NCBI RefSeq assembly: GCF_006345805.1
Contig: NW_021834987.1
Location: 1-43,642 of the forward strand
Direction: 5' to 3'
Length of the DNA stretch: 43,642 nucleotides
Source: Octopus sinensis
Taxonomy: Eukaryota
Shown here: piece after piece, positions 4,110 to 43,507 of the stretch
Numbering within the stretch: position 1 is the first letter of the stretch
Layout: the number at the start of each line of letters is the position of its first letter
Translations under genes and position numbers: made by a program
The notes under the pieces: model-generated
What the model saw: the letters and a program-made list of their open reading frames with translations, nothing else
The model's database searches: none
What the model was told of the DNA's origin: nothing

Positions 4110-5360
4110 TTAACTCATTGATAATTCATCATTTTGAAAGAACGATTTAGGAGGGACTTCAGATTTCTCTCTTGCATGAATTCGTTTGTGTTTAGTTAAG
4201 CTACTCCCAACAGAGAATGATTTCCCGCAGACGTCGCAATGATACGGCTTCTCTGCCGAATGAACACGTTTATGAACTGTTAAATGATAGTTTCTCGAGA
4301 ATGATTTACCGCAAATATCACAATACGGTTTCTCACCCGTGTGTAAGCGTTTGTGGATAGCAAATTCATTATTCCGAGCAAACGATTTCCCACAGGTATC
4401 ACACAGGTAAGGCTTCTCACCTGTATGGATACGCTTGTGAATAGCCAAGCTATCTCGGTTAGACAATGATTTACTACAAATATCACACTGATATGGCTTC
4501 TCACCTGTATGAACACGTTTGTGACTAACCAAGCATCGATTTTCGTAGAACGATTTACCACAGATGTCACAGTGATACGGTTTCTCCCCTGTATGAAGGC
4601 GTTTGTGTCGAGTTAACCTGCTGCCATCAGAGAATGATTTACTACAGATATCACAATAAAACGGTCTCTCACCTGTATGAATACGTTTGTGAGTAATCAA
4701 GCTAGACGCAGCGGAGAATGATTTACCACAGGTGTCACAGTGATAAGGTTTCTCTCCTGAATGAATATGTTTGTGAGTAGTTAAGTTACTTGTAGCGGAG
4801 AATGATTTACCACAGATATCACAGTGGTACGGTTTTTCTCCTGTATGGGTGCGTTTATGTTTCGTGACGGTACTCCCTGTCGAGAATGCCTTACCACAGA
4901 TATCACAATGATATGGTTTCTCCCCGGTATGAATGCGTACGTGAGTAGTTAGATCCCTATTTTGAGTGAATGATTTACCACAAGTGTCACAATGATATGG
5001 TTTCTCTCCCGTATGAATATATTTGTGTATGTTTAACTTATCTCTTCGAGAGAATGATTGCCCACAGATATCACAGTGATATGGTTTCTCTCCTGTATGA
5101 ATTCGTACGTGTTTAATTAAACTACCTCCAAGGGAGAACGATTTTCCACAGATGTCACAATGATATGGTTTCTCCCCTGTATGAATGCGTTTGTGACTGA
5201 CTAAATCTGAATTTTGATAGAAAGATTTTCCACAGGTATCGCAGTGATGTTGTTTCTCACCTCTCTGAATGCATTTGTGTTGGTTGAGTTTACCTTCATT
5301 TGAAAATGATGTTTTGCTGGTGTCACAGTCATGTAACGATTTTCCTAATTCTTCCGACAT
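4110..5360 (-). CDS. C2H2 zinc-finger protein ZNF1 (416 aa; 13 intact fingers plus degenerate N- and C-terminal fingers)
   Basis: Uninterrupted ORF with repeated C-x2-C-x12-H-x3-H and TGEKPY linkers; ATG preceded by TTTTTCCTGCAG|AG, an acceptor-like sequence. Confidence 0.95.
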
Positions 5361-5870
5361 CTCTGCAGGAAAAATAAAATCAATCCGTCAATAACTTTTC
5401 AAAAATGTCTCTCCTCTCACCAAAATTTATGGATATTTTTCTTCTTTTTGCTTTAATAGTTAATTCCAAACAAATATCACTTCTCTTATATTTCTTCTAA
5501 ATGTGATCAATGCCAATATTTAAAAATGCCGCAAATACTCTTTGTAAATCCATCAAAGTATATTTAAAAGAGAAAATTATCTCTTGCACATTTCAGACAC
5601 AGAAGTAAAGAAATGCTTTCTCTCTCAGAGGAAATATTTTACTGTAATTCAGCAATGTTTTCTAGAAGCAGGATTATACGTTTGTAGAATATCTTTGCAG
5701 AGTCTTTCAAACATGATACATATTGATGATTCTTTAAAAGTAAAAAATACTTTTAGCCAATTTCATGTGATTTTTCTGAAAGAATAGAAAAAATAATATA
5801 AGACATCAAGTATGTTTAAAAGGCAGATATTCAAAAGTGCAAATTTACAACATTTCTGTTTTCATAAATT
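5361..5870 (-). promoter_or_regulatory. Conserved ZNF 5' cassette copy 1: 3' splice acceptor (AG at 5777-5776) and 415-nt leader
   Basis: Minus strand TTATTTTTTCTATTCTTTCAG|AAAAATCAC; block nearly identical upstream of ZNF2 and ZNF3. Confidence 0.7.
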
Positions 5871-6011
5871 GCTGAAGTAAACCTTTAACTGAACTTTTTA
5901 AACTTATCCAATTGGGACAAGTCGATTACGTCAACACCAGTGGTTTTCTGACACATTAATTTATGGACCCATAACAGATAAAAGATAAAATTAATCTCGG
6001 CAAGATTCGAC

Positions 6012-6332
6012 CCTGTGCATGAGGAGACCTATCGAGTCAAGTACATCAACATCAAAAATCAATGGAAACTGTAGTTGTGATCCCTGTGCCGGTGGCACGT
6101 AAAAGGCACCATCCGAACGTGGCCGATGCCAGCCTTGCCTGGCACCTATGCTGGTGGCACGTAAAAAGCACCCACTACACTCACGGAGTGGTTGGCGTTA
6201 GGAAGGGCATCCAGCTGTAGAAACACTGCCAGATCAGATTGGAGCCTGGTGCAGTCTCCTGGCTTCCTAGATCCCAGTCAAACCGTCCAACCCATGCTAG
6301 CATGGAAGGCGGACGTTAAACAATGATGATGA
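6012..6332 (+). mobile_element. Family B element inserted in a decayed family D SINE (5915-6420)
   Basis: Family B body and tail, flanked by degenerate family D halves. Confidence 0.7.
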
Positions 6333-6584
6333 CGGTGATTTCGACTCAGGATGTAAGAATCAAAAGCAATGCCGACGCTAAGCAATTTTCCAAACGAGCT
6401 GACATTTCTACAAGGTCACTACCTTGAGTGAAGAACTAATATTCATTCTCTGGTGAGGAAAACCAAAATCTTTCGCTGTAAATTACAGATGTTCCAAACA
6501 AAATACACTTCATTATCGACAAGATATTCATCCAAGACTTGGGATAAACACAGTAGCGATCGATAACCAAACCTAGGGGAAGCG

Positions 6585-7212
6585 GGTACTACTTGAGAAC
6601 AATGGTCCCGGTGCGCGCACTCGCGCTAACTAGTAGATCCTACAACGACTACGTAGCAAAGTAAATAAAATACAAAATAAATAATTTGTTAAACAAAGTA
6701 AATAATTCTTTAAACAAAGGCGCAGGAGTGGCTGTGTGGTAAGTAGCTTGCTTACCAACCACATGGTTCCGGGTTCAATCCCACTGCGTGGCACCTTGGG
6801 CAAGTGTCTTCTACTGTAGCCTCGGGCCGACCAAAGTCTTGTGAGTGGATTTGGTAGACGGAAACTGAAAGAAGCCCGTCGTATATATGTATATATATAT
6901 GTGCGTGTTTGTGTTTGTCCCCCTAGCATTGCTTGACAACCGATGCTGGTGTGTTTACGCCCCCGTGTCACCTAGCGGTTCGGCAAAAGTGACCGATAGA
7001 ATAAGTACTGGGCTTACAAAAAAGAATAAGTCCCGGGGTCGAGTTGCTCGATTAAAGGCGGTGCTCCAGCATGGCCGCAGTCAAATGACTGAAACAAGTA
7101 AAAGAGTAAAGTAAATAAAACACAAAGTAAGGATCGACTAGTCATGACTAGCTAGCGCGGATGCACAAGTACGCGAGTGCGCGCACCGGGACCACTTTTC
7201 TCAAGTAGTACC
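6585..7212. mobile_element. Non-autonomous Merlin-type MITE with an internal SINE insertion
   Basis: 41-bp TIRs GGTACTACTTGAGAA(C/A)A(A/G)TGGTCCCGGTGCGCGCACTCGCG with 2 mismatches; 9-bp TSD GGGGAAGCG at 6576-6584 and 7213-7221. Confidence 0.9.
6719..7110 (+). mobile_element. SINE family A, inside the Merlin MITE
   Basis: Full head GGCGCAGGAGTGGCTGTGTGGTAAG...GGGTTCAATCCC through to the tail. Confidence 0.9.
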
Positions 7213-7509
7213 GGGGAAGCGTTTGTTAGCTGAAATCACCCGTAGACGGGTTAATTTCTAAGAAATTAAACCCGTCAGAGTTCAACCGGGCAATTTATTA
7301 TTGCCGACGGGAGCTGGTCCGCAATCGTCGTAAAGTCGACAACGACCTGCATTGGTTAATGAGGACAATTAAATTAGTGAAGATATTTCTCCAAACGTAA
7401 TTATTTTACTTAAATTTTTTTACCACTTTAATGTTTACCCTTTTAAAATTAGAATATCCGTGTTTTGTCTTTTATTATTTTTAAAAATCATTAAATCTTA
7501 TGAGTGATA

Positions 7510-8345
7510 TTTTTCATCGTTATTGTTTCGAAACGAAAACGAAATATTGTCTAATTCCAAGAGTGGAAAATACATTCTTATTAAAAGTAGACGTATTTCG
7601 AAGAGAGAGAGAGAAAAAGAATAATTAATTTCAAATAACATTAAGGAAAAAGATATTAACTACAAGTTGTAATGATGCAGAGGAACCAACAGCAATAAAT
7701 ATTTCCAAATTTTCAAATAAATGTTCCATTTCTTCAGCTAGTGCTATTTCCTTTTCGTTTCAGTATTTCAAGTACACGATCGTAGTTTTATACATTACCC
7801 ATTTCTTTCAAATTTCATCGGAATTTTTCAACATTTAATTAAATTATCGAATTTACATGTCAGAGATAAAGAGAAATTTAGTTCGAATATGGTATTGATC
7901 TGATGTTAAGAATATAGGAAATAACCAAAACTGCAATGGAATGTCTAAAAACAAGAACAATACAATGAAAGTATTAAAATAATATAATTTCGTCTTTGTT
8001 TAGTGAGATTCTTTTAATTTATTGAACACATCGGAAGAAATCGATGCACGTAATATGACACATATACACTAAAAATATTTATATAATAAATACAATACTT
8101 ACATGGTAATATATATACATATGTATAGAGTCAACGAGGAAGCTGTGAAGAACTTAAGTTAAGTGGATAATTAATAGCTTCAAGAGAATTCCTAAGTTTT
8201 TTTATAACAAACTTTGATTCATATTTTCCAGGTCAATATATAAAAAAACGAATGTTGTTTCTATATCTTTACACAGTTAATTGTATATTTAATTGGGTTT
8301 CCACTTAATTATCAGTAATAAAGTGGAGCGATCGAGCAGGACAGA
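7510..8345. other. Distal conserved upstream block of the ZNF unit (paralogous to about 15040-16290; partial at 37960-38030)
   Basis: Collinear matches such as GTTGTAATGATGCAGA, TTTTCGTTTCAGTATTTCAAGT, ATAACCAAA(A)TGCAATG and CAGCTTCAAGAGAATT; roughly 70% identity by eye. Confidence 0.7.
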
Positions 8346-8509
8346 CGTGGATGAAGAAACCACAGAATTGGGAGGATTTAGCAATTAAGTGACTACGGGA
8401 GCTAACTCTATGAGTCTCAGGCAGCCTGGCATTACTTAATACGGTTTTATACTAGCGAGCACCTGTCGTCAAAAATAGCCGTCGATCTTTCGATACTAGT
8501 AACATAACT

Positions 8510-9410
8510 GGGTTCCTTTCGGTTTGAACGGTAGTTTTTTAACATAATTTCTAGGTAACTAAAAAATTTTAAACTTCGTATACTGGTAGAATGTGTTTAT
8601 AAAACATCTTTTTCTCTTGGCTTTATTGAGAAAATTCTATAGTTTGTAAGATATTTGTTGTTTTTTTTCCTTCAATTTTTGCAATTTCAACCAATCAATG
8701 ACGTCCATTGAGGTAAAAAAAATTCTGTGCCGTATGAATATGTCCCTCGTTTAAGAAACAGGATCTTTTCGGTTTGAACGGCAGTTTTTAAAAATAATTT
8801 CCACGTAACTAAACACTTTTAAACTTCGTATACTGGTAGAATGTGTTTAAAAAACATCTTTTTCTCTTGGCTTTATTGAGAAAATTCTATAGTTTGTAAG
8901 ATATTTGTTGTTTTCTTTTTCTTCAATTTCAACCAATCAATGACGTCCATTGAGGTAAAAAAAAAATATTCTGTGCCGTATGAATATGTCCCTCGTTTAA
9001 GAAACAGGATTTTTTCGGTTTGAACGGCAGTTTTTAAAAATAATTTCCACATAACTAAACACTTTTAAACTTCGTATACTGGTAGAATGTGTTTATAAAA
9101 CATCTTTTTCTCTTTGCTTTATTGAGAAAATTCTATAGTTTGTAAGATATTTGTTGTTTTTTTCCTTCAATTTCAACCAATCAATGACGTCTATTGAGGT
9201 GAAAACATTCTGTGCTGTATGAATATGTCCCTCGTTTAAGAAACAGATTAGGTTTATTTACATTTGTGAAGAAAAAAGATACCCTTTCCCCTAACCCCAA
9301 CCCTAAAACACATTGAAATGCAATAGATCGATACTAGGGTCATAATTATGGGTGACAATTTCATATGACACCGCTAGAAAAAACTGCTGTTCAAACTGAT
9401 AAGATCCAAA
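8510..9410. mobile_element. TIR element whose left 245-bp segment is tandemly triplicated
   Basis: Units start TCGGTTTGAACGG(T/C)AGTTTT at about 8519, 8769 and 9016; the right end AAAAACTGCTGTTCAAACTGATAAGATCC is their inverted complement; CCCTAACCCCAACCCTAA inside; a related inverted pair lies at 38875-39031. Confidence 0.65.
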
Positions 9411-11059
9411 AGTTGTTTTTAAGTTACAATGGCTTAAAGTTCGATTATGTTTACTCATTCACAAAACTGGGTTTGGAAGCCATCATTTTGTGCATGGCAA
9501 CACGTGTTGTCAAATATTTGTGAATCTGTATTCTTCACACGGTAATTCATAGGGTACTTTTACTTTTGTTTCAGTCATTCGACTGCGGCCATGCTGGAGC
9601 ACCGCTTGTAGTCGAACAAACCTACAACTCTCTCTCTTCTCTTTCCCCTCCTTAATTCTTTTGTTCCTCTTTTCTCTCTCTTCTCTTCCCACGTGACCGA
9701 TAGCCCAGACAGCTAACCCTCTTTTTGCGTCTGACCACGGTCAGTGCAACATCGATATTCTTCCCTGTGTTTGTGAAAGCTCTGTATCTCTGCCGTAAGG
9801 CTTCATTTCCACACACACCAGCTGAATTCAATTCGTCCCCAGTCGAAAGACACCTGTTGTTATGTCCTGTTATTATTATTAATATTTTTATTGTATTTTG
9901 TATTTATATTTGTGTAACATCGTCTGTTTTTCCGTCCTTATTTTCGTATACATTCCATGCTTTCTTCCAGGAATCTGATGCTCTTAGCTTACTTTTTCCT
10001 TGGGGCTGGCCAGATTGGAGCAATCTCAAGATTAATCAGCCGAAATTGCGAGGATGATCTGGTTCTTTACAGGGGACAGAAAGCTTCGAATGACCCGTCC
10101 TTTCTTTTTCATAAAGGACCCGTTTGTACTTTGGTGTGAAATAATTTTTTCCACACGTTTTTTTGAGTGCATTCAACGATGCTCAGTCCGAACCCACCAC
10201 CCGCCAGATTCTTCCGAAAAGAAAGGGGGAGGGGTGGTGGGGGACCTTGGAGTTTCCCCACCAACAGAGTTTTTTTTTTTTTTTTTTCAGGGTTACTTTA
10301 CATGCTTTCAATGTATGTGACATTGAAATTATACGTAAACGGCTCCTTTCCTTAGAAAAGGAAAGATTCAGCCACTATTTCTTGCATGCCCTGCTACCAG
10401 GTAACAGCTATTTTGAGTCCTGTATCGTAAATAGCTGTTGTATGGTAACAGGGCATGCTAGAAATAGCAGCAACCAAATCTTTGGAGATGAGATATATTG
10501 AATGCACTTGAATAAAACCTATGGAAACAATTTTTTCACAGTGAGGTTATGAACAGGTCTTTTACGAAATATTTATGGTATTTCTAAAGCCATCTTCACT
10601 TTAAAATATTTTTAAATATGCCAAAACATTTTCGTAATGGTATTCAATTGAAAATAATAAAAAAATAAATAAAATTGTCTGTTTAAAGAAAGCTAAAATA
10701 TAAATACAAAAAAGCAAAAATAGAAAAATTTCCTGTAAAAACAACTTTTTTTGTTGGCAAGTTAGTCATAATGTGTCTAACCGAAGGCTAGAAATTCTTC
10801 CTTTTCAGGGTTAAGTTATTTTTGGTGTATTTTCCCAATATGCACTGTTTTGGGTATTCATACCCACCAAAACTCCTAATATCTCAAGAACCAGTTGTCC
10901 AATTCACGCGAAACTTGTTTTATTCCGTTTGTATTCACATTTCAAGAAAGTCTTAATTCTTAGTATTTTCCCCATTATGTGCCATTTTGGCTATGTAACA
11001 TTGGAAGCAAGATTGAAGTTCATTTTTAATGTAATATATGTGTGTGTGTGTGTGTGTAG

Positions 11060-11165
11060 AGGTCTGCCTACTTACAACTGCAAGACAAGTATTTAGTTGT
11101 GAATAAACCATTATACTTGGCACTTGTTGGCCTGGAGAAAGTCTTTGATAGAATTCCTCAGTTGG
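11060..11165 (+). mobile_element. Short degraded RTE RT fragment
   Basis: NKPLYLALVGLEKVFDRIP; near-identical to the reverse complement of 21343-21437. Confidence 0.65.
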
Positions 11166-12589
11166 CCACACACCAAGGTTCAACAGAACCTACTGAAGCA
11201 AGCCAACGTGCTTCTAGCATTATCACAGGCAAGAGCAAGAAGTCGACATTAATGTTCGTACTGTTTTCAAATTTTGGCACAAGGCCAGCAATTCTACGGG
11301 TGTGTGTGTGTGTATGTTAAGTTGAATATGTCGATTCCAGTGCTCAACCGTTGCTTATTTCCACCAACCGCCAAAAGGACGAAAGACAAAGTCCACCTTG
11401 GCAGAATTTAAATGCAAATGTCATGTCAGAAGAACCACAGCTAAGCATTTTCCCCAATGTGCTAACGACCCTGCCAGTTCGCCACCTTAGTTTATTATTA
11501 ATTACTAGTGGGACCCATGTAAATTCTACAGAATGAAAAGAATTAAGAGGACCTATTTAAGAAAGAGAGGATGATTTGCATTTTTATAGCATTCATAGTT
11601 TTAGCTTTCTTTGAATAGACTTGGCATCTGTCTACATCCAATTCCTCACAACACCATCGGTGCCATCTTTTTCCTCTCTTTTATTATATCTTCTTAGTGT
11701 TCCATGCATCTTTTCTCAGGCAGCTTGCAACCGTGTCTCTAGTGAATCCATAGTTTAGGCTAAATTAATCCTTAGAAACAAATATCAATCTCTTAAGTGA
11801 GAAGGCGATAAATTGCACAGAAGTGCAAGTGTTGAGTGATGGTCTCTATAAAAAAAAAAAATTCCTTTACCCTATCAACACACCACCACCACCATCATCA
11901 TCTCTCTCTCTCTGCCTTTCTTTAATATCAACATCAGAACATCACCACTCTGCTAAGATTATTTTCTAACTCTTCCCTATATCACGACCTTCACGCTTCA
12001 GCTAGGTTTTTTAACCATAAAATAACTATACATTCCCCCCATCACGTCATGCTTGCTTATTTCTTAGTCTTTTTGTCTCTCTCCTTTTCTCTTTCTCTAT
12101 TTGCCCACTCTTTGTCTCACTCTTTTCTCTCTCATCTTTTCTCTCTCTACCCCCCCCCCTTTTCTCTAATAACATGAAAGTGTTACTGACGAGCTAAGTA
12201 ACAGAATGAGAAGCAGAATTATTATAAGATCACCTTACTCTATTTCTCCCTCCCTTTTCTCCACTTCTGTCCCCACCCCTCATTTATTCCACTAATCTAA
12301 TGAAAGCATAACAGCTGTACAAACAAGCTGGTTATTATATATATACATAAATATCATTTTTGTCTGAGGTTTGGATATTTTTTGCAGAGTAATTACATAT
12401 CACATAAGAAGACTGGAAAACAGTTTGATAGTATTTATTCAGCATTACATGTGTTTCATTACCTAATAGGAATTATAAACTTTTAGACAAAGAGAAAACA
12501 TGTAAAATATCTACTATAAGAAATTCTTCATATATACATATATACACGTGTGTGAGTGTGTGTGTGTGTGTGTATGCACAAGTGAGTGT

Positions 12590-12830
12590 ATCCTTGTCCA
12601 GACATTATGTGATGTCCGTAAATGGCCATCACGACCGTCATACTTGTGCAGTTATTCATTTCCAGTCCTCTGCGTAAATTATGTCTCACCAGGGAAAATA
12701 TTTCCTTGCTTGGAAACAGGTGAGGATTGGTGACAAGAAAGGGTACCCAGCTCAGGAAAATCTTCATCAATGAATTCCATCTGATCCATTGAAGCATGGA
12801 AAAGCGAATTTTAAATGATGATGATTATCA
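12590..12830 (+). mobile_element. Diverged B-like 3' end (also 40290-40445 and 41030-41278)
   Basis: GGTGAGGATTGGTGACA...CATGGAAAA...TTAAATGATGATGAT. Confidence 0.6.
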
Positions 12831-13162
12831 TCATTGTAGTGATATGGTTCCTCTTCTGTATTAATGCAGTTATGTTTTAATAATTGATCATTTTCATAGA
12901 TTGACTTAGCACAAATGTCTTAGGGTATGGTTTTATCTTTCATATTAATAGGACTGTGTATAATTCTCCATTTTCATAGAATGATTAAGCACTGCTATCA
13001 CAGTGATATGTTTTCCTTTCTCTGTCAATGCTCTTTTGATTCGTTAATGGATCATTTCAAATGAAAGGCTTACCATTGATATAGTTTCTTTCTTGTGTAG
13101 AGGGTTTTATGAGATACAAATTTGTCCTTCTGAAGGAATGTTATACAACCAATGTCACTGTG

Positions 13163-13948
13163 TTATGGATCAACTTCATAGTGAATACACTTGTGTTTAA
13201 TTGAGTGATGTTTTTGTGAGAATGATTTACCACAGATGTCACAGCGATATGGTTCCTCACCTGTGTGAATACGTTTATGTGCAGTCAAGGTACTGCTAAC
13301 AGAGAATGATTTACCACAGATATCACAGGAATATGGTTTCTCCCCTGTATGAATACGCTTGTGTTTGGTTACGCCACCGCTTTCAGAGAATGATTTACCA
13401 CAGATATCACAGGGATATGGTTTGTTTCCTGTATGAATACGTTTGTGTTTAATTAAGGTACTGCCTTGAGAGAATGATTTACCACAAATATCACAGTGAT
13501 ATGGCTTGTCTCCTGTATGAATACGTTTGTGTGCAGTTAAGTTACAGCGAACAGAGAATGATTTACCACAGATATCACAGGGATATGGTTTCTCTCCTGT
13601 ATGAATGTATTTGTGAGCAGTTAAGTGGTGATTTTGAGAGAATGATTTACCACAGATATCACATTGATATGGTTTCTCCCCTGTATGAATACGTTTGTGG
13701 TTGGGTAAGCTACTGCGAACAGAGAATGATTTACCACAGATATCACATTGATATGGTTTCTCCCCTGTATGAATACGTTTGTGGTTGGGTAAGCTACTGC
13801 GAACAGAGAATGATTTACCACAGATATCACAGTGATATGGTGCTTCCCCTTTATGAATTTGTTTGTGTTGATTGAATTTACTTTCTTCTAAGAATGACTC
13901 TTTGCAGATGTCACAGTCATATGATGATTTTCCTAATTCTTCAGACAT
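13163..13948 (-). CDS. C2H2 zinc-finger protein ZNF2 (261 aa, 9 fingers)
   Basis: ORF with 9 canonical C2H2 motifs; N-terminus MSEELGKS shared with ZNF1. Confidence 0.93.
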
Positions 13949-14450
13949 CTCTTCAAGAATAATAAAATCGATCCTTCAAGTTCTACAGATCAACAACTTT
14001 TCAAAAATTTATGGATATTTTGCTTTTATAGTTTATTCCAAACAAATATCACTTCTCTTATATTTCTTCTAAATGTGATCAATGCCAATATTTAAAAATG
14101 TTGCAAATACTCTTTGGAAATCTATCAAAGTATATTTAAAAGAGAAAATTATCTCTTGCACATTTCAGACACAGAAGTAAAGAAATGCTTTCTCTCTCAG
14201 AGGAAATATTTTACTGTAATTCAGCAATGTTTTCTAGAAGCAGGATTATACGTTTGTAGAATATCTTTGCAGAGTCTTTCAAACATGATACATACTGGTG
14301 ATTCTTTAAAAGTAAAAAATACTTTTTAGCCAATTTCATGTGATTTTCTGAAAGAATAGAAAAAATAATATAAGACATCAAGTATGTTTAAAAGGTAGAT
14401 ATTCAAAAGTGCAAATTTACGACATTTCTGTTTTCATTAATTGTAGAATT
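13949..14450 (-). promoter_or_regulatory. Conserved ZNF 5' cassette copy 2 (acceptor at about 14348 and leader)
   Basis: About 97% identical by eye to 5460-5870. Confidence 0.7.
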
Positions 14451-15094
14451 GATCCTTTATCTGAAGTATTATATTCATCCCATCTCTCTATTTTCAAGAG
14501 GTTTATATCACAGACACATCCATCGGAATAACACCTCCTGGACATTGCGTCTGTCCTAGACACACACACTCACACCAATATACATGTCAATGACAGTAGA
14601 TATCTGATGTCTTCCCCTCAGTGTTCTATTGTATCAACACAGGTTTGTTTTATAACATAGACATCACTCCTCCTCTGCCTCTTTCTGTATATGCATAAAT
14701 ATACAAATATATATATGTGGTTAGCTTAATGTTAACATTTTGTTGAGCATAAAAGATGCATAAAAGTCAGTAAATAATATTGATGTCTGACTTGCAGCAT
14801 CAAAATCTTTTGTGGGGAATTTTTGATGTTAAGAAAAATTGTTGGTTGATGAAATTGGTGACAATCCTTCTCCATGGGGCAAATGGAAGAGGCTTCAATG
14901 AAGTCTATCCTTATTTTACGGAAAAACTATAATTTCTTTTCATTGTTATGCACATAGTTTTAAAATTTAGCCATTCTTGTTTTTTTCTTTTAATTATAAA
15001 TTCTTACACATTATAATTAATGTTTCTCTTCCTTGTTGCTTCAAAACGAAATATTGTTTATCTGGATGAGTGAAAAATACATTCATATTAAATA

Positions 15095-15521
15095 TATACG
15101 CATTACGAAGAAAGAAAAGGATAACTTGCATAATTATTGAAAATAACATTAAAAAAAGGGTGCAATTCTGCTTTAAACATTATATAGCTCCTTATAATTT
15201 TTTCCCCATTTTCCTGTGGAATTTTCGGAAATTTTTCCAATTTGTGATCTATATTATGAAAAAAATTGTTTTTTTTCAATTTTTCCCATTTTTTAAAAAA
15301 TTGCCACTGTAAACCTTTTTAAAAAATGGGAAAATTGAAAAAAAACAATTTTTTTCATAATATAGATCACAAATTTGGAAAAATTTCCGAAAATTCCACA
15401 GAAAAATGCGAAAAAAAATTTAAGGAACTATATAATGTTTAAAGCAGAATTGCACACTTTTATTAATGTTGTTTTCAATTAATTATGCAAGTTATCCTTT
15501 TCTTTCTTCGTAATGCGTATA
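15095..15521. repeat. Long inverted repeat (about 205-bp arms, 15-bp spacer 15301-15315)
   Basis: TATACGCATTACGAAGAAAGAAAAGGATAACTTGCATAATT... pairs with ...AATTATGCAAGTTATCCTTTTCTTTCTTCGTAATGCGTATA. Confidence 0.92.
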
Positions 15522-16399
15522 ATGCGAATACGTATTTGCAAAGATTTTCTGAAAATTCCGGAAAAACAAAACAAACCCCAGATATTAATTGTAAGTTGTA
15601 ATGATGCAGAAGAACCGCCAGAAATAAAGACTTCCTATGTCTCAAAAAAAGCCATTTCCTCTCGATACGATATTTGCTTTTCGTTTCAGTATTTCAAGTG
15701 CACACTCGTATTTTTATACATTCCCCATTTCTTCTACTAATTACATCGTAATTTTCCCGCTTTTAACGAATCGTCGAATTTACACGTTAGAAAGAAAGAT
15801 AAATGTTATCTAAACAAGGGATTGATCCGACGTTTTTACAAATAATTTAGAAAATAACCAAAGTGCAATGAAATGTCTAAAAGAAAACGACAACACAATG
15901 AAAGTATTAAAATTACAGCCTTTCGTATAATTTCGTCTTAGTGAGATTTTTTTTCCTTTTAACTTTCTCAACACATGGAAACAAATAAATGTACATAATA
16001 CGACACATATATAATAGAAATGTTTAAATAAATACTTACATAGTAATAGATATGGAGAGAAAGAGTGAAGGAGGGAGACGTGAGAACTGGAGTCAGAGTG
16101 GACAAGGACAGCTTCAAGAGAATTTCTAGATTTCTACAACAAACGTTAATTAATATTTTTCAGGTCCACATAATCGTAAATGCTGTATCTGTTTGTTTAG
16201 ACAGTTAATTACCAATCATTTGTATATATTTGATTGGGTTTTCCTCTTAAATATCAGTTGTCAAGTGGAACTGATCAAACAATCAAGGTGCGTGAGAAAC
16301 AAGAACAAGAAATAAAACTTAATTAGGAAGGATTAATTATGAACAAGGGCAACTAACTCCAGTCATAAGCGACAAAACACACCATTACTCACTCACTCT

Positions 16400-21800: not shown

Positions 21801-22012
21801 TTGATTTCGATTTTTTCATATATATATACCGGAGTAAACACATAAATGTGAAACAAGGTGGAAAAAAGAGTACTCAAATACCAGTGGTAGAGAAATATGC
21901 TTTATTTAAAGCAGCAGAAAATTCAACAAAATCTGTTACTCTGAGTTTCTCGTTGCCGTTCATCAGACAGTTTTTGCTAGAAATTTTTGAATTTTCTGCT
22001 GCTTTAAATAAA

Positions 22013-34400: not shown

Positions 34401-34848
34401 TATATTACTGGAAGAATGCGAAAAGACGATTTAAGATCATGATGGGGGTACACTCCAACATGGTGGAATCGTATCTAGACGAATTTCTGTGGAAGGAGCA
34501 ATAAGGGAAGTGTGGAAAGGAATGTCTTGAAAACATTCTTAAGCACCTTTCCGAACGTTTCACATTCAAGTGAATCAAATGAACTGCAAGAACTGAGATA
34601 TTCAATTTTCTACTTGCTGTTTGCTTTTTATTTACTTCAATTAATTTGTGTAAAAAAATGATATACATAAAAATTTTTTTAAAAATCTTTGTTTATAAAA
34701 AAAAATATTTACTTCGTTTCCAAATATGTATCGCGCATGCACCAATCTATTCATTAGCATATGCGCAAGTTGTAGGATCGATTACTTATGACCAGCTAGC
34801 GAGGATGCAGGACTGAGCGTACCGGGACCACTGTTCGCTAGTAGTACC
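34400..34848 (+). mobile_element. Merlin lineage C: transposase C-terminal fragment and right TIR
   Basis: 34403-34572 reads YYWKNAKRRFKIMMGVHSNMVESYLDEFLWKEQ*...LENILKHLSERF. It ends ...ACCGGGACCACTGTTCGCTAGTAGTACC at 34848. Confidence 0.8.
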
Positions 34849-34920: not shown

Positions 34921-34923
<3 letters not shown>

Positions 34924-34972: not shown

Positions 34973-35828
34973 TTAAAATCTTGCAATCCCCGCTAACAGT
35001 TTTTCAAAAAGATCGCAACCTTCGTACCTTTTGCGCCACATAATTTCACAGAGACCGGAGTCAATCATAGAACTCTGCTTAACACAGGCCCAAGGGCCTT
35101 CCATCCGTGGCGACTTTGACTTTGACTTAGACCGAGCACCGTGCTTCTCTGCTTTATGGCGAAATTGATAACCCTCGATCTCCGGAATATGAGAGTAAGA
35201 TCTCCACAGATCACTAATGACCGTGGTTCCGGGGAGAACCGATTGGCGGATGCATTCTTCGAGTGTGTCGCGATCCCGACATGTTATTGTATAGAGAAAA
35301 ACCTGCTTGGCCTTGCGACACACTCCTTTATAGACCCACTGGTGGGGCGGCCGACCTCCAAGTCTACATTTCCTCCTCGAGAAGACTGTCTCGTCTATCT
35401 CGACAACCTTCCCAGGACCACCTATCTGAACTGGGTTGAAGAGTAAGTCCTCTGCACAGACTTCTCTTAAACAGCTGGTGTAGTCAACAGCTGCAGTGTG
35501 ACTCACACCCAGCTCTTCATAACAATAACGTATCGTGGTCAGCTTCTTCACCCAAGAATACAAGAAAAGGAGGATAGTTCGCAGAGGAAGCGAGGTGCCT
35601 TCCAGCCATGTACCTTTCCTAACAGATAGAGACTGGTCACAGCCTTTCCGTGTGCAGCGCCAGCGAACGCTCCGATCTTTCACTTTGCGTTTCATGAAAT
35701 GTCTCTTTTTACATTTTCTTTGGAGGTATTATACCCTTCTCTGCAAAGAAAGCTACCGCATCCGCTTCGGTCCTAATCGTGTTGAACAAATCCATGAGGC
35801 CATGCGGTTTAGTTGCAGCCACAGCCAT
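34973..35828 (-). CDS. Merlin-transposase-derived ORF B (about 284 aa if a +1 A in AAGAAAATGT near 35715 is removed; 240 aa from the ATG at 35695)
   Basis: Upstream frame MAVAATKPHGLMDLFNTIRTEADAVAFFAEKGIIPPKK joins C-KKRH-FMKRK...WRCTRKGC; motifs QIGGPGKVVEIDET, GTTVISDLW, MEGPW, LCEIMWR; no TIRs seen. Confidence 0.8.
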
Positions 35829-36484
35829 ACTTCCTCAATACAACAGTAGGGGGGAAATGCAAAAGTGCAAAGAGACGATCGAAAAGCAAAAAAAAAAAAA
35901 AAAAAAACTACTATGCAACAGACAGCAAACAGAAATAAAAAATATAACAGATTGGGGGAAAATAATCACAAAATTAACATGGGGAAATGTACAAAAGGGG
36001 GCGTTCAAAAAACAAGAAAAAATACAAAAAAAAAACGTGTAATATGAAACAGGTAGGAAACAAAAAAGTTAAATAGAACAGTGTTGGAAATAATTACAGG
36101 TAGTGAGTAAAAATATCCACATATAAGTTAAAAAAATATACAGTCAAATTAAGAACACACCAGAATAATAATGTGCACGTGGTCGTGTTGCTCTCAGATT
36201 ACTATCGCAAACAGTAGGATTCTTCATGCGACAACATGGAATAAATTCTAAAGTACACGTGGTTCTGTTGCTCTTTGGTTACTTTCACAAACAGTAGAAG
36301 GTATCTTCAGGTATTTGTCGATTTGGTTAGAATAATCCAAATGCGACAACATGAAATAAATTCTAAAATACGAAAGCTTGTGAAAAATGTTGACAGTGTT
36401 CAGCGTGAGAATTACACCAGTATATGAAGTTTCAAACAGTTCAGTTTAAAATATATAATCAAAAATATCTGTGAACCAAATTGA

Positions 36485-37005
36485 AGAGATTTAAATTACC
36501 TCTTGCGCATTTCATTCAGCGAAATAAAGCAATGTTTTTTTCTTTCTCTCTGAGGAAATATATTACTGTAACTCAGCAATGTTGTATAGAAGCAGGATTA
36601 TACGTTTGTAGAATATCTTTGCAGAGTCTTTCAAACATGATACATATTGATGATTCTTTAAAAAAAAATACTTTTTAGCCAATTTCAGGCGATTTTCTGA
36701 AAGAATAGGAAAATAATATAAGACATAGAATATGTTTAAAAGGTACAAATTTACGGTACCAATTAATAGTAGTCACGGTGCGCGCACTCGCGATAGTTAG
36801 TCGTGACTAGTCGATCTTTACTTTGTGTTTCTGTTCTACTTTGTTTAAAAAGAATTATTTAGTTTGTGTTTTATTTGTTTCAAATAAAATTATTTACTTT
36901 GCTAGATAGTCGTTGTAGGATCGAGTAGTCACGACTAGCAAGCGCAGATGCGCGTACCGGGACCACGCTTCTTAAATAGTACCCAAATTTACAATTGTTT
37001 TGATA
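36485..37005 (-). promoter_or_regulatory. Orphan ZNF 5' cassette copy 4 (acceptor at about 36697; leader truncated; no finger array downstream)
   Basis: Homologous to 5575-5880 (GAAGCAGGATTATACGTTTGTAGAATATCTTTGCAGAGTCTTTCAAACATGATACATATTGATGATTCTTTAAAA identical to copy 1); interrupted by a MITE at 36755-36983. Confidence 0.75.
36755..36983. mobile_element. Merlin-type MITE (229 bp), same family as 6585-7212, opposite orientation, SINE-free
   Basis: GGTAC...GTACC termini; 9-bp TSD CAAATTTAC at 36746-36754 and 36984-36992; the paralogous empty sites near 5840 and 14412 carry a single CAAATTTAC. Confidence 0.9.
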
Positions 37006-38457: not shown

Positions 38458-38869
38458 GGCACAGGAGTGGCTGTTTGGTAAGTAGCTTGCTAACCAACCA
38501 CATGGTTCCGGGTTCAGTCCCACTGCATGGCATCTTGGGCAAGTGTCTTTTGCTATAGCCCCGGGCCGACCAATGCCTTGTGAGTGGATTTGGTAGACAG
38601 AAACTGAAAGAAGCCTGTCGTATATATGTATATATATATATATATAAGTGTGTGTGAATATGTTTGTGTGTCTGTGTTTGTTCCCCTAGCATTGCTTGAC
38701 AACCGATGCTGGTGTGTTTACGTCCCCGCCACTTAGCGGTTTGGCAAAAGAGACCGACAGAATAAGTACTGGGCTTACAAAGAATCGGGGTCGATTTGCT
38801 TGACTAAAGGCGGTGCTCCAGCATGGCTGCAGTCAAATGACTGAAACAAGTAAAAGAGTAAAGAGTAAA
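38458..38869 (+). mobile_element. SINE family A
   Basis: Same head, body and tail. Confidence 0.88.
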
Positions 38870-39460: not shown

Positions 39461-39509
39461 AACACACACGCATGCATTTATACATATACACATGGATACA
39501 AATTAAATT

Positions 39510-40176: not shown

Positions 40177-40585
40177 TATTATATATATATAACATATATA
40201 TACACACATACACATGTGCATGTGTAACATATATGTGTTCTCTTACATGATGGTTGTGATTGTGCATCGACATCAAATGAGCAGTTGTTAGTTTCCAGTC
40301 TGCATAAAATATGTCCTTGCTTGGAAACAGGTGAGGATTGGTGACAGGGAAGGCATCCAGCTGCAGAAAAATCTCCATCAATGAATTCCATCTGATCCAT
40401 TGAAGCATGGAAAAATGAATTTTAAATGATGATGATTATCATCATCATGATATGCAAAAAAAAACAGTTTGATAGTATTTATTCAGCATTACATGTGTTT
40501 CATTACCTAATAGGAATTACAAACTTTTAGACAAAGAGAAAACATGTAAAATATCTCCTATAAGAAATTCTTCCTATATACATAT

Positions 40586-40980
40586 AGGAGTGGCTGTGTG
40601 GTAAGTAGCTTGTTTACCAACCACATGGTTCCGGGTTCAGTCCCACTGTGTGGCATCTTGGGCAAGTGTCTTCTGCTATAGCCCCAGGCCGACCAATGCC
40701 TTGTGAGTGGATTTGGTAGACGGAAGCTGAAAGAAGCCTGTCGTATATATGTATATGTATATATGTATGTGTGTGTGTGTGTGTGTTGTCCCCCTAGCAT
40801 TGCTTGACAACCGATGCTGGTGTGTTTACATCCCCGTCACTTAGCGGTTCGGCAAAAGAGACCGATAGAATAAGTACTGGGCTTACAAAGAATAAGTCCC
40901 GGGGGTCGACTTGTTCGAGTAAAGGCGGTGCTCCAGCATGGCCACAGTCAAATGACTGAAAAAAGTAAAAGAGTAAAAGA
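40586..40980 (+). mobile_element. SINE family A in the ZNF3 3' flank
   Basis: Absent from the paralogous ZNF2 flank (about 12540). Confidence 0.88.
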
Positions 40981-40984
40981 GAGA

Positions 40985-41018
<34 letters not shown>

Positions 41019-41672
41019 CACAAGTGAGTGTATCCTTGTCCAGATATTATGTGATGTCCGTAAATGGCCATCATGACCGTCATACTTGTGCAGTTGTTCA
41101 TTTCCAGTCCTCTGCGTAAAATATGTCTCACCAGGGAAAATATTTCCTTGCTTGGAAACAGGTGAGGATTGGTGACAAGAAAGGGTACCCAGCCCAGGAA
41201 AATCTCCATCAATGAATTCCATCTGATCCATTGAAGCATGGAAAAGCGAATTTTAAATGATGATGATTATCATCATTGTAGTGATATGGTTCCTCTTCTG
41301 TATGAATGCAGTTATGTTTTAATAATTGATCATTTTCATAGATTGATTTAGCACGAATTAGGTTATGGTCATATCTTTCATAATAATAAGACTGTGTATA
41401 ATTAATACACCATTTTGAAGGAATGATTAACTCTTTCGTTACTGTATTTATTTTGAGATGCTCTGTGTTTCTTCCAATTATTTTAAATATAACAAAGAAT
41501 TTAGTAAAATAATATCGTTATCATTAAGCTAGTGTTAGGAACATAAATTGTGACTAAAATTTGGTGGAAGATTTGAATTCAAAACTTATGAAAAAAAAAC
41601 ATTTACACTAAAAAGCCAGAGCCGGTTTCAGTCAGGTTGGTAACGAAAGGGTTAAGCTCTGATATCAGACCG

Positions 41673-43048
41673 TTATGGTTTCTCCTCTGTATGAATATGT
41701 TTGTATTCAGTCAAGATGCTCTGAAGAGAGAATGATTTACCACAGATATCACAAAGAAATGGTCTCTCCTCTGTATGAACATGGTTGTGTACAGTTAATT
41801 GTTGGTTTGTAGAGAATGCCTTGCCACAGATATCACTCTGGTATGGTTTCTCACCTACATGAACATACCTGTGCATAACTAATTGTTTGTTTTGAGAGAA
41901 TGATTTACCACAGATATCACAATGATATGGTGTTTCTCTTGTGTGTATAAGTTTGTGTGCAGTTAAATGGTATTTTCGACAGAATGATTTACTGCAGATA
42001 TCACACTGATATGGTTTCTCACCTGTATGAATCCGTTTGTGTGTAGTTAAGGTACTGCCAGCAGAGAATGATTTACCACAGATATCACAGTGATAAGGTT
42101 TTTCCCCTGTATGAACCCTTTTGTGCGTAGTTAAGCTACTGTCAACAGAGAATGATTTACCACAGATATCACAGTGATAAGGTTTTTCCCCTGTATGAAC
42201 CCTTTTGTGCGCAGTTAGTAAGTACTGCTAACAGAGAATGATTTACCACAGATATCACAGTGATAAGGTTTCTCTCCTGTATGAACCCTTTTGTGTATAG
42301 TTAAGCTGTTGCTTTTAGAGAAAGATTTACCACAGATATCACAGTGATAAGGTTTCTCTCCTGTATGAATACGCTTGTGTTTAGTTAAGCTGTTGCTTTT
42401 AGAGAAAGATTTACCACAGATATCACAGTGATAAGGTTTCTCTCCTGTATGAATACGCTTGTGTTTAGTTAAGCTTTTGCTTTTAGAGAAAGATTTACCA
42501 CAGATATCACAGTGATATGGTTTTTTTCCTGTATGAATACGTTTGTGTCGAGTGAAGCTACTGTCAACAGAAAATGATTTTCCACAGATATCACAGTGAT
42601 AAGGTTTTTCCCCTGTATGAATACGTTTATGTACAGTTAAATAGATATTTCGAGAGAATGATTTACCACAGATATCACAGTGATATGGTTTCTCTCCTGT
42701 GTGAATGTATTTGTGAGTAGTTACCTCACTTCTTTCATAGAATGATTTATCACAAATGTCACACTGATATGGTTTGTCTCCTGTATGACTACGTTTATGT
42801 ACTGTTAAATAGATATTTTGAGAGAATGATTTATTGCAGATATCACAGTGATATATTTTCTCTCTCGTATCAATTTGTTTATGACTGAATAATTCTGAAT
42901 CTTGACAGACTGATTTATCACAGGTATCATGGTGATTTTGTTTCTCATCTGTATGAATGCATTTGTGTCTAGTGAGTTCACCTTTTTCTGAAAATGACTC
43001 TTCGCAGATGTCACAGTCATATGATGATTTTTCCAATTCTTCCGACAT
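41673..43048 (-). pseudogene. C2H2 zinc-finger gene ZNF3, frameshifted at about 42215 (277-aa truncated ORF; about 457 aa and 16 finger units if repaired)
   Basis: ORF 43048-42215 ends SVSSTY*. The array resumes in another frame ([32 protein letters not shown]...) down to a stop at 41673. N-terminus [15 protein letters not shown]. Confidence 0.88.
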
Positions 43049-43507
43049 CTCTTCAAGAAAAATTTAATGAATCCTTCAAGTTTACGCGTCAATAACTTTT
43101 CAAAAATATTTCTCCTCTCACCAAAATTTATGGATATTTTGCTTCTTTTTGCTTTAATAGTTAATTCCAAACAAATATCACTTCTCTTATATTTCTTCTA
43201 AATGTGATCAATGCCAATATTTAAAAATGTTGCAAATACTCTTTGGAAATCTATCAAAGAATATTTAAAAGAGAAAATTATCTCTTGCACATTTCAGACA
43301 CGGAAGTAAAGAAATGCTTTCTCTCTCTCTCAGAGGAAATATTTTACTGTAATTCAGCAATGTTTTATAGAAACAGGATTATACGTTTGTAGAATATCTT
43401 TGCAGAGTCTTTCAAACATGATACATATTGATGATTCTTTAAAAGTAAAAAATACTTTTTAGCCAATTTCATGTGATTTTCTGAAAGAATAGAAAAAAAA
43501 TATAAGA
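43049..43507 (-). promoter_or_regulatory. Conserved ZNF 5' cassette copy 3 (acceptor at about 43481 and leader)
   Basis: Near-identical to copies 1 and 2. Confidence 0.7.

What the first reader, a model, noticed from the sequence alone, without database searches (positions are those of the whole stretch)
4110..43507. Constant flanks, hypervariable finger arrays among ZNF paralogs
Seen: the leader and acceptor blocks of ZNF1 and ZNF2 differ at only about 10 of 410 positions. The ZNF2 and ZNF3 3' flanks (12421-12930 vs 40466-41360, apart from one SINE) are similarly close, e.g. 2 mismatches in about 108 bp. Yet finger numbers differ (13, 9, about 16 units) and the -1/3/6 contact triplets are almost all different; only V/T/A is shared, between ZNF2 finger 8 and the frameshifted ZNF3 finger. 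The distal upstream block is only about 70% identical, so the duplications are old. Inference: either gene conversion or constraint on proximal flanks, or rapid, possibly positively selected turnover of DNA-binding specificity. The latter would be PRDM9/KRAB-ZFP-like behaviour in a family with no KRAB domain visible here, possibly a TE-targeting arms race.
Basis: partly seen in the sequence, partly recalled or inferred. Interest (0 to 1): 0.7.

Follow-up and report, generated by a model that had tools for sequence, protein, structure and literature searches.

The report
Octopus zinc-finger genes: converted flanks, shuffled fingers
Three neighbouring octopus zinc-finger genes keep almost identical untranslated ends, apparently by copying them from one another, while their DNA-reading finger arrays gain, lose and rewrite units; this is real, but it is the pattern already known from vertebrate zinc-finger clusters.

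Summary
The window is unplaced scaffold VCDQ01005440.1 of Octopus sinensis. It carries three same-strand, KRAB-less C2H2 genes: Z1 (13 intact fingers plus a degenerate first unit), Z2 (9) and Z3 (16 units, with a 2-bp frameshift).

A leader of about 430 nt upstream of each ATG is 97.6-97.8% identical in all pairs. A roughly 500-nt 3' block shared by Z2 and Z3 is about 97.5% identical and ends about 20 nt after AATAAA. No finger unit pair between genes exceeds 89% identity, no array register exists, and only V/T/A is shared.

The contrast comes mainly from young flanks, not unusually old arrays. Unconverted flanking DNA is 70-75% identical, and orthologous N-terminal dS is 0.27-0.53. Leader variants show all three possible groupings of four sequences, which points to interlocus gene conversion. 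The leader is also a conserved part of the gene across the family, not a transposon.

Rapid array turnover is supported independently. The near-identical chromosomal copy of Z2 has 16 units against 9 here, and 6 of its 9 amino-acid changes lie in the recognition helix. A second pair elsewhere behaves the same way.

Positive selection and transposon targeting remain unproven. This is a new example of a known kind.

The parts
4110..5360 (-). Z1 ORF, 416 aa: MSEELGKS, a degenerate unit 0, then 13 intact C2H2 fingers
   Evidence: Pfam finds only C2H2 families. The same protein is encoded on chromosome CM016886.1.
5361..5861 (-). Z1 untranslated leader. A pyrimidine tract plus TTTCAG (acceptor-like) ends at 5776.
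3384..3502 (-). Decayed finger relic 3' of Z1, displaced by a repeat cluster at 3495-4098. It is 74% identical to the start of the Z2 3' block.
7408..8338 (-). Distal upstream block of Z1. It represents the old duplication: 69-72% identical to 14926-16281.
13163..13948 (-). Z2 ORF, 261 aa, 9 finger units. Units 1 and 2 are 99% identical to each other.
13949..14433 (-). Z2 untranslated leader. TTTCAG ends at 14348.
12901..13162 (-). Decayed fingers between the Z2 stop codon and the conserved 3' block. Only about 65-88% identical to the Z3 counterpart.
12404..12900 (-). Z2 3' block: relic finger, old repeat fragment, (CA)n, and AATAAA at 12439-12434. About 97.5% identical to the Z3 block.
14926..16281 (-). 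Distal upstream block of Z2, the old homologue of 7408-8338
41673..43048 (-). Z3 array of 16 units. A 2-bp insertion at 42218-42219 shifts the frame; the first ORF stops at 42215; units 1, 14 and 15 have lost ligands.
43049..43510 (-). Z3 untranslated leader. TTTCAG ends at 43481.
40449..41342 (-). Z3 3' block, interrupted by a SINE at 40587-40989. AATAAA at 40483-40478.
40306..40445 (-). Extra 140-nt copy (92%) of an internal segment of the 3' block, the part that resembles a local repeat family
36484..36751 (-). Orphan copy of the first ~215 nt of the leader, with its acceptor-like site. It is 8-9% diverged, has no ORF behind it, and lies next to a MITE-like element.

Best explanation
Z1, Z2 and Z3 are old tandem duplicates of a lineage-specific, KRAB-less poly-C2H2 gene family of Octopus sinensis. 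They are mosaics of young and old sequence.

Each gene is a cassette with four parts. It starts at a conserved acceptor-like site. A ~480-nt untranslated leader follows. Then come the ATG and the finger array, with nine codons before the first unit. It ends in a 3' UTR that runs to an AATAAA signal.

Two processes act on this cassette.

(1) The non-coding ends are kept almost identical among neighbouring paralogs by recurrent interlocus gene conversion. This acts on top of moderate purifying selection on a leader that the whole family conserves.

(2) The finger arrays are not homogenised between genes. They change by gain and loss of whole 84-nt units, by duplication and conversion within an array, and by amino-acid replacement concentrated in recognition-helix positions -1 to +6. 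The inferred result is that DNA-binding specificity diverges quickly while regulation stays shared.

Shown here: the sequence anatomy, the divergence figures, the incompatible site patterns, the array-length difference between the two copies of Z2, and the family-wide leader. Inferred: conversion as the mechanism, the UTR and splice roles, and the functional consequence for binding.
For: Old duplication.
- Distal upstream blocks are 69-72% identical. A third copy lies upstream of a fourth paralog, Z0, just beyond the window.
- The Z1 3' relic is 74% identical to Z2's.
- The stretch between the stop codon and the 3' block is about 65-88% identical in Z2-Z3.
- Orthologous N-terminus plus unit 0 has dS of 0.27-0.53. 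Poisson P is 5e-7 to 9e-5 against the leader rate.

Young islands.
- Leader distance is 0.022-0.024 in all three pairs, close to the 0.016 between the two copies of Z2.
- Tract edges are sharp.

Conversion signature.
- Among 14 variable leader sites, all three splits of {Z1, Z2-window, Z2-chromosome, Z3} occur, at alignment columns 293, 409 and 498/505.
- At column 293 the derived G is shared by Z1 and only one Z2 copy.

Not extreme constraint.
- The Z0 leader is only 68% identical.
- Leaders of other clusters are 65-75% identical to these.
- The 42-codon upstream ORF is broken in Z1 and Z3.

A gene part, not a transposon.
- TTTCAG with its pyrimidine tract, and several motifs, are invariant in 10 leaders from three scaffolds. 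Nine of them sit at a fixed distance upstream of a ZNF ATG.

Array dynamics.
- No finger unit pair between genes exceeds 0.89 identity, and no register exists.
- Z2 has 9 units in the window and 16 in the chromosomal copy, with clear unit-by-unit orthology and two insertions or deletions of 6 and 1 units.
- In orthologous units there are 6 non-synonymous and 0 synonymous helix changes, against 3 and 3 in the framework.
- L004 A/B has flanks 97-100% identical and arrays of 7 against 10 units with reordered best matches.
- Framework dN/dS is 0.08-0.19, and entropy peaks at -1, +1, +2, +3 and +6.
Against: - The conversion signal rests on only two mutually incompatible sites plus tract shape. No formal GENECONV or PHI test on many sequences was possible.
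- The block limits coincide with functional landmarks: an acceptor-like site about 45-100 nt inside the 5' edge, and the poly(A) signal at the 3' edge. Selection on UTRs also predicts this.
- Divergence between the two Z2 copies is lower inside the leader (6/373) than just upstream of it (9/184), which fits constraint as well.
- No transcript data were available, so the UTR, acceptor and poly(A) roles are inferred.
- The chromosomal copy could be a very recent segmental duplicate rather than an allele.
- Array lengths depend on long-read assembly accuracy.
- Helix dN does not significantly exceed dS.
Confidence: 0.66

Rival explanations
1. Purifying selection alone. The leader and distal 3' UTR are functional RNA or regulatory elements under very strong constraint, so they stay about 98% identical while everything else drifts. 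No gene conversion is needed.
For: - The leader architecture is conserved family-wide across three scaffolds.
- Block edges sit at an acceptor-like site and about 20 nt past AATAAA.
- Divergence between the two Z2 copies is lower in the leader (1.6%) than immediately upstream (4.9%).
- In L001 the leader is also more similar (82-100%) than the coding sequence (76-88%).
Against: - The same leader is only 68% identical in the adjacent paralog Z0, whose distal flank is as diverged (72%) as that between Z1 and Z2.
- Leaders of different clusters are 65-75% identical.
- Z1 lacks a conserved 3' block; its relic is 74% identical.
- All three four-taxon splits occur in the leader.
- The 3' block consists of a dead finger, an old repeat fragment and a microsatellite.
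Confidence: 0.15
2. Recent duplication with hyper-fast arrays. The three genes duplicated recently, so flanks are about 2% diverged. The arrays and adjacent sequence then diverged extremely fast through positive selection and inter-finger exchange.
For: This is what is seen for the L004 A/B inverted pair and for the two copies of Z2. There the whole flank is 97-100% identical but the arrays differ in number, order and helix residues. Contact dN (0.72-1.05) exceeds framework dS (0.23-0.42) for Z2-Z3.
Against: - Near-identity in the window paralogs is confined to 430-500-nt islands.
- DNA just outside the islands is homologous but only 69-75% identical.
- The unique N-terminal unit 0, which has no donor fingers to be shuffled from, has dS of 0.27-0.53.
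Confidence: 0.1
3. The flank blocks are copies of an independent interspersed repeat that happens to lie next to the ZNF genes.
For: - There is an orphan partial leader copy at 36484-36751 with no ORF.
- A 140-nt piece of the 3' block recurs at 40306-40445.
- Positions 122-194 of the block weakly resemble a local repeat family.
Against: - Nine of ten leader copies, from three scaffolds, sit at a fixed distance upstream of a ZNF ATG and in the same orientation.
- The 3' block is a collinear composite, shared end to end, that starts with a decayed finger.
- No terminal repeats or target-site duplications were seen.
Confidence: 0.04
4. Assembly artefact. Haplotig mis-joins or long-read errors create the mosaic, the frameshift and the array-length difference.
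For: The window is an unplaced 43.6-kb scaffold that duplicates a chromosomal region. Identity switches from 99.8% to about 98% at a tandem repeat near 8.75 kb. The Z3 frameshift is a 2-bp insertion.
Against: - The flank-versus-array contrast is seen within one contiguous sequence, and again in two other scaffolds.
- The units missing from the window Z2 are distinct sequences (69-93% identical to the others), not collapsible copies.
Confidence: 0.04

Closest known systems
Lineage-specific tandem poly-C2H2 (Krueppel-type) ZNF clusters, as analysed by Emerson & Thomas 2009 (PMC2604467)
   Same: Tandem paralogs differ in finger number. Diversity is concentrated at helix positions -1, 3 and 6, while the framework and linker are under purifying selection. 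Occasional gene conversion occurs among paralogs.
   Different: No KRAB, SCAN or BTB effector domain is encoded, and only nine residues precede the first finger. Here the homogenised parts are untranslated leader and 3' UTR blocks, not an effector-domain exon.
Octopus and cephalopod C2H2 expansion (Albertin et al. 2015, from my own knowledge as the paper is not held; Holzinger et al. 2025, PMC12513265; Wells et al. 2023, PMC10547256)
   Same: Same genus and the same kind of clustered, recently expanded C2H2 genes. Wells et al. already report that base-contacting residues are the most variable, and that octopus ZNF motifs are predicted to match transposons.
   Different: In the sections I read, gene conversion is not mentioned in either PMC10547256 or PMC12513265, and UTRs are not mentioned in PMC12513265. 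I saw no description there of a conserved untranslated leader or of array-length differences between haplotypes. This locus adds those details.
PRDM9 zinc-finger minisatellite
   Same: There is array-length variation between two near-identical copies of a locus (9 against 16 units). Units are duplicated or converted within the array (units 1 and 2 are 98-99% alike within a copy but 93-96% between copies). Changes are concentrated in the recognition helix.
   Different: There are no PR/SET or KRAB domains. Most units within an array are only 65-88% identical, so this is not a true minisatellite. Nothing links it to recombination.
Concerted evolution of non-coding parts of tandem gene families by interlocus gene conversion (general phenomenon, from my own knowledge)
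   Same: Discrete near-identical tracts with sharp edges lie inside older duplicates. Site patterns are mosaic. Paralog divergence is about equal to allelic divergence.
   Different: The tracts coincide with the untranslated ends of the transcription unit and skip the coding repeat array in between.

Membership tests
Tandem C2H2 poly-zinc-finger gene | Repeated C-X2-C-X12-H-X3-H units of 28 residues joined by TGEKP-type linkers | tested here: met
   34 strict motif matches, all on the minus strand. Pfam zf-C2H2 and zf-H2C2_2 hits have E-values of 1e-46 to 1e-106.
KRAB-ZFP | N-terminal KRAB domain (PF01352) | tested here: not met
   Pfam finds no KRAB hit in Z1-Z3. The ATG lies 9 codons before unit 0, with in-frame stops 10-11 codons upstream. 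NCBI models of paralogs start at the same Met. A coding upstream exon cannot be formally excluded without transcripts.
PRDM9-like | PR/SET methyltransferase domain upstream of the array | tested here: not met
   No SET-domain hit.
PRDM9-like | Allelic variation in number and identity of fingers | tested here: met
   Z2 has 9 units in the window and 16 in the chromosomal copy, with about 2% flank divergence. Whether the two copies are allelic is inferred.
FiNZ-ZNF / other ZNF families with an N-terminal domain | A conserved N-terminal protein domain shared by the family | tested here: not met
   Only MSEELGKS (8 to 9 residues) precedes the fingers. What is conserved is the non-coding leader.
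Interlocus gene conversion / concerted evolution | Short near-identical tracts with sharp edges embedded in older, diverged duplicates | tested here: met
   Fisher P = 3e-33.
Interlocus gene conversion / concerted evolution | Phylogenetically incompatible (mosaic) sites among paralogs and alleles | tested here: met
   All three four-taxon splits are present in the leader core. Only 2 to 4 informative sites support this.
Interlocus gene conversion / concerted evolution | Formal recombination tests (GENECONV, PHI) and a GC-biased substitution signature | not tested
   There are too few sequences here; it needs genome-wide paralogs.
Positive (diversifying) selection on contact residues | dN/dS above 1 at positions -1, 2, 3 and 6 in orthologous fingers | tested here: inconclusive
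   In recent pairs pooled, helix pN is 0.098 against framework pS of 0.069, and framework pN/pS is 0.33. Counts are small: 19.5 non-synonymous and 2.5 synonymous helix differences.
Interspersed repeat (as the origin of the flank blocks) | Copies dispersed independently of ZNF genes | tested here: not met
   Nine of ten leaders sit at a fixed distance upstream of a ZNF ATG. Only parts of the 3' block are repeat-like. The sample is limited to four loci.
Transposon-targeting repressor (arms race) | Binding to transposon sequences and repression of them | not testable with these tools
   Only a published in-silico prediction exists for octopus ZNFs in general (PMC10547256).

The most novel reading that the evidence does not exclude
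The invariant acceptor-like site, the shared leader and the shared 3' end could mean that each ZNF is a 'variable terminal cassette'. Under this reading all same-strand cassettes in a cluster are spliced to a common upstream promoter or first exon. Alternatively, the conserved leader could serve as a promoter-choice element. Either way it would be a protocadherin- or UGT1-like one-of-many expression architecture for DNA-binding specificities in octopus neurons. The flanks would then be homogenised because the cassettes must stay interchangeable. The orphan leader exon at 36.5 kb, which keeps an acceptor and has a GT donor, would be a leftover or an active internal exon of such a unit.
Probability: 0.08. 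Interest if true: 0.75.

Novelty: new member of a known kind. Interest (0 to 1): 0.38.

Why it matters
It gives a clean, small-scale dissection of how an invertebrate, KRAB-less zinc-finger cluster evolves. Regulatory and untranslated ends are kept interchangeable by concerted evolution, while the DNA-reading arrays are remodelled even between two near-identical copies of one locus.

It also supplies a family-wide non-coding leader that could serve as a genomic tag. With it one could find and phylogenetically sort this octopus ZNF subfamily, design primers that span whole arrays for population surveys, and test for shared regulation.

It does not change the general picture, established in vertebrates and already proposed for octopus.

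Tried and rejected
- Protein searches. Full-length searches with Z2 and Z1 were swamped by vertebrate ZNFs and returned no octopus relatives. Only the 76-aa N-terminal query found octopus proteins, because results are limited to 1.75 times the query length.
- Exact look-ups. Look-ups of the Z2 and Z3 ORFs found no called gene. I therefore could not fetch the chromosomal counterpart of Z3 or of window positions above 14.6 kb.
- Array register. A search over every unit offset found none that stands out.
- Upstream-ORF idea. The 42-codon ORF in the leader is frameshifted in Z1 and stopped early in Z3, and is only 4 codons long in L001 g1 and g2. I rejected it as a coding constraint.
- Leader as exon plus intron. 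The GT at the putative donor is present only in the orphan and in L001, not in Z1-Z3 or L004, so an internal intron is not supported.
- GC-rich motif upstream of the orphan. It turned out to be the end of a MITE-like element that is also present elsewhere in the window.
- RNA genes. tRNA and Rfam scans were both empty.
- Literature. Albertin et al. 2015 could not be read because it is not held.


Full report
**What is in the window**

The window is the complete unplaced scaffold VCDQ01005440.1 (43,642 bp) of the Octopus sinensis assembly GCA_006345805.1. Three C2H2 zinc-finger genes lie on the minus strand.
- Z1 is 5360..4110 (416 aa). It has a degenerate unit 0 and 13 intact fingers.
- Z2 is 13948..13163 (261 aa) with 9 units.
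- Z3 is 43048..41673 with 16 units. A 2-bp 'AC' insertion at 42218-42219 shifts the frame in unit 9, so the first ORF stops at 42215. Units 1, 14 and 15 have lost zinc ligands.

Pfam finds only C2H2-type families: no KRAB, SCAN, BTB or SET. Only MSEELGKS (8 to 9 residues) precedes the first unit, and in-frame stop codons lie 10-11 codons upstream of the ATG.

The intervening DNA is dominated by transposons.
- A SINE-like family is present six times.
- Two LINE copies are 92.7% alike.
- Two ORFs carry IS1595-like DDE transposase domains.

**Check of the observation**

- Leader: Z1 5861-5413 against Z2 14433-14001 has 422 matches and 10 mismatches. In the alignable core the three pairwise distances are 8/372, 9/382 and 8/372.
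- Leader edges: identity collapses to 60-73% upstream. It decays to 74-86% within the first 100 coding nucleotides.
- 3' flank: Z2 12900-12404 and Z3 41342-40449 are 95-100% identical per 50-nt window, once the SINE at 40587-40989 is removed.
- Fingers: the -1/3/6 triplets all differ between genes except V/T/A, shared by Z2 unit 7 and Z3 unit 9.
- Fingers: no unit pair between genes exceeds 89% nucleotide identity.
- Fingers: no array offset gives a better diagonal than any other.
- Distal upstream: this DNA is 69-72% identical.

**Which side of the contrast is unusual**

The flank blocks are the anomaly.
- DNA just outside them is homologous but old. The distal upstream blocks of Z1 and Z2 are 69-72% identical.
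- A third copy of that block lies in the same relative position upstream of a fourth paralog, Z0, just beyond window position 1 on the chromosomal copy. These blocks therefore belong to the ancient duplication unit.
- The 3' relic finger of Z1 is 74% identical to that of Z2.
- The roughly 200 nt between the stop codon and the 3' block are only about 65-88% identical between Z2 and Z3.
- The one coding part with clear orthology, the N-terminus plus unit 0, has dS of 0.27-0.53. That is incompatible with the leader's 0.023 (Poisson P 5e-7 to 9e-5).
- Framework synonymous divergence between arrays is 0.23-0.42 for Z2-Z3 and 0.74-1.1 for pairs involving Z1.

The arrays are thus about as old as the duplication. 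The leader and 3' block are young islands within it.

**Why the islands are young**

A chromosomal copy of the locus gave a fourth sequence. It is L002, from CM016886.1:2,926,117-2,947,367.
- It encodes the identical Z1 protein.
- It is about 99.8% identical to window 1-8750 and 97-98.5% identical to window 8750-14617.
- It is therefore the other haplotype or a very recent duplicate.

In the leader core there are 14 variable sites among Z1, Z2-window, Z2-chromosome and Z3. All three possible two-by-two splits occur.
- Column 293 groups Z1 with Z2-window.
- Column 409 groups Z1 with Z2-chromosome.
- Columns 498 and 505 group the two Z2 copies.

At column 293 the outgroups (the orphan copy and the L001 genes) carry T. 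The derived G is therefore shared by Z1 and only one Z2 copy. Paralog distance (0.022-0.024) is barely above the distance between the two Z2 copies (0.016). This mosaic, together with the sharp tract edges, is what interlocus gene conversion predicts.

Extreme constraint alone is unlikely.
- The Z0 leader is only 68% identical, although its distal flank is no more diverged than that between Z1 and Z2.
- Z1 has no conserved 3' block.
- The 42-codon upstream ORF in the leader is broken in Z1 and Z3.
- The 3' block is made of a dead finger, an old repeat fragment and a (CA)n tract.

**The leader is a gene part, not a transposon**

Genes of the same subfamily on two other O. sinensis scaffolds carry a homologous leader at the same distance from the ATG. 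These are L001 (three genes starting MSK[ED]LG.S) and L004 (MPKERGKS, plus an inverted pair with a longer N-terminus).
- In the alignment of ten leaders, a pyrimidine tract followed by TTTCAG is invariant. Several motifs, such as TGAATTAC.G..AAATAT and TTTGCAGCATCTTTAGATAT, are nearly so.
- Between clusters the leaders are 65-75% identical.
- Within L001 they are 82-100% identical, against 76-88% for the adjacent coding sequence.

So there is real, moderate purifying selection on the leader across the family, with local homogenisation on top. The lower divergence between the two Z2 copies inside the leader (6/373) than just upstream of it (9/184) fits either force.

The TTTCAG is most simply a splice acceptor, which implies an unseen upstream exon. 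A TATA-plus-initiator reading cannot be excluded without transcripts. The GT that would make the leader an exon plus intron is present only in the orphan copy and in L001, so I do not support that model. The Z2/Z3 3' block ends 17-20 nt after AATAAA (12439-12434 and 40483-40478), a plausible cleavage site.

**Arrays do turn over fast, shown independently of the flank issue**

The chromosomal Z2 has 16 units against 9 in the window.
- Unit-by-unit orthology is unambiguous: w0=c0, w1~c1, w2~c2, w3~c9, w4=c10, w5~c11, w6~c12, w7=c14, w8~c15.
- The difference is therefore two whole-unit insertions or deletions, one of six units and one of one unit. The chromosomal copy also carries a triplicated QNHHLTA unit.
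- Units 1 and 2 are 98-99% alike within each copy but 93-96% alike between copies. That indicates duplication or conversion within the array on this short timescale.
- In the nine orthologous units, 12 codons differ. Six are non-synonymous and none synonymous in helix positions -1 to +6. Three are non-synonymous and three synonymous in the other 21 codons. One is a complete three-base codon swap at -1 (CAA to GGT).

On L004 an inverted pair shares 97-100% identical flanks over about 1.2 kb upstream and 0.5 kb downstream. Yet it has 7 against 10 fingers. Best unit matches are only 89-95%, and two units are in reversed order.

Pooling both recent pairs gives the following.
- Helix pN is 0.098 and framework pS is 0.069.
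- Framework pN is 0.023. The helix is clearly less constrained than the framework.
- An excess of helix pN over pS is not significant with these counts.

Positional entropy over 49 intact units peaks at +3, -1, +6, +1 and +2, as published for octopus and other animals (PMC10547256).

**Comparison with what is known**

The pattern matches lineage-specific poly-ZF expansions. In those, paralogs almost never keep the same finger number, selection signals concentrate at -1, 3 and 6, and some paralogs show gene conversion (PMC2604467).

Two points are already published for octopus.
- The C2H2 expansion itself (Albertin et al. 2015, from my own knowledge; PMC12513265).
- The idea that octopus ZNFs target transposons, supported by motif prediction (PMC10547256).

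In what I read, neither PMC10547256 nor PMC12513265 mentions gene conversion, and PMC12513265 does not mention UTRs. I saw three things described in neither paper.
- A family-wide untranslated leader.
- Its local homogenisation.
- A 9- versus 16-finger difference between two near-identical copies of a locus.

These are additions of detail, not of kind. The genes are not KRAB-ZFPs or PRDM9 homologues, because the defining domains were tested and are absent. They behave like them only in array dynamics.

**Verdict**

- The best explanation is mosaic evolution. Untranslated ends are homogenised by gene conversion under moderate constraint. Arrays are remodelled by unit gain and loss, exchange within the array, and helix substitutions.
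- Positive selection and transposon targeting remain open.
- Caveats: conversion rests on few informative sites, transcript structure is inferred, and array lengths rely on a long-read assembly.

Noticed in passing
whole window; L002 (CM016886.1:2926117-2947367): The window is an entire unplaced scaffold that duplicates a chromosomal region. Identity is about 99.8% for window 1-8750 and switches to 97-98.5% for 8750-14617. The switch lies at a tandem repeat (8511-9246, ~250-nt units, 90-92% alike). The scaffold is probably a haplotig with a recombinant or mixed history.
   Followed up: partly
window 42218-42219: A 2-bp 'AC' insertion frameshifts Z3 inside unit 9. Four downstream units are still intact in the new frame, so this is either a very recent pseudogenisation or a long-read insertion/deletion error.
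   Followed up: partly
window 36484-36751 and 36776-36985: An orphan copy of the first ~215 nt of the leader, with its acceptor-like site and a GAG|GT donor-like site, has no ZNF behind it. Directly upstream is a ~200-nt MITE-like element with inverted ends. Its end motif AGTGCGCGCACCG recurs at 6609, 7176, 23318 and 39056.
   Followed up: partly
window 2841-3197, 6724-7110, 16985-17332, 32632-33021, 38463-38862, 40586-40977: Six copies of a ~390-nt SINE-like repeat are 79-90% identical to each other. One interrupts the Z3 3' block. ARAGORN and Rfam find no tRNA-like part.
   Followed up: partly
window 23607-27255 and 28665-32317: Two tandem copies of a LINE-like element are 92.7% identical. 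They carry reverse-transcriptase-associated zf-RVT ORFs. Between them is an ORF1-like ORF of 455 aa with a CCHC knuckle (27498-28865).
   Followed up: no
window 33551-34453 and 34973-35695 (minus strand): Two adjacent ORFs have ISXO2/IS1595-like DDE transposase domains (E-values 1e-14 and 2e-6). This domain is best known from bacterial insertion sequences, here in an octopus scaffold.
   Followed up: no
window 537-1027, 3495-4098, 6006-6344, 21441-21805: A repeat family starting 'CATCATCAT...TTTCCATGCTGGCATGGGTTGGACG' occurs in partial tandem copies. One cluster sits directly after the Z1 stop codon and separates Z1 from its old 3' relic finger.
   Followed up: partly
window 13754-13837 / 13670-13753; L002 units c1/c2: Z2 units 1 and 2 carry the helix VRSSLPN in the window copy and VRSSLTK in the chromosomal copy. 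Both units changed together, a small-scale case of concerted evolution inside one array.
   Followed up: yes
window 13418-13501 (Z2 unit 5) vs L002 unit c11: The -1 codon differs at all three bases (CAA to GGT, Q to G) in an otherwise 96% identical unit. This looks like a micro-conversion from another finger rather than three point mutations.
   Followed up: no
L004 5030-7666 and 17488-20328: An inverted ~2.6-kb duplicate pair of ZNF genes has a longer acidic N-terminus (MENELYRSEVE...). Their leader contains a ~250-nt insertion relative to the other family members.
   Followed up: partly
L002 15855-16559 (about 0.5-1.2 kb beyond window position 1, opposite strand): A fourth paralog (Z0) lies tail-to-tail with Z1. 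It has a different N-terminus, a leader only 68% identical, and the same distal upstream block at 72%.
   Followed up: partly
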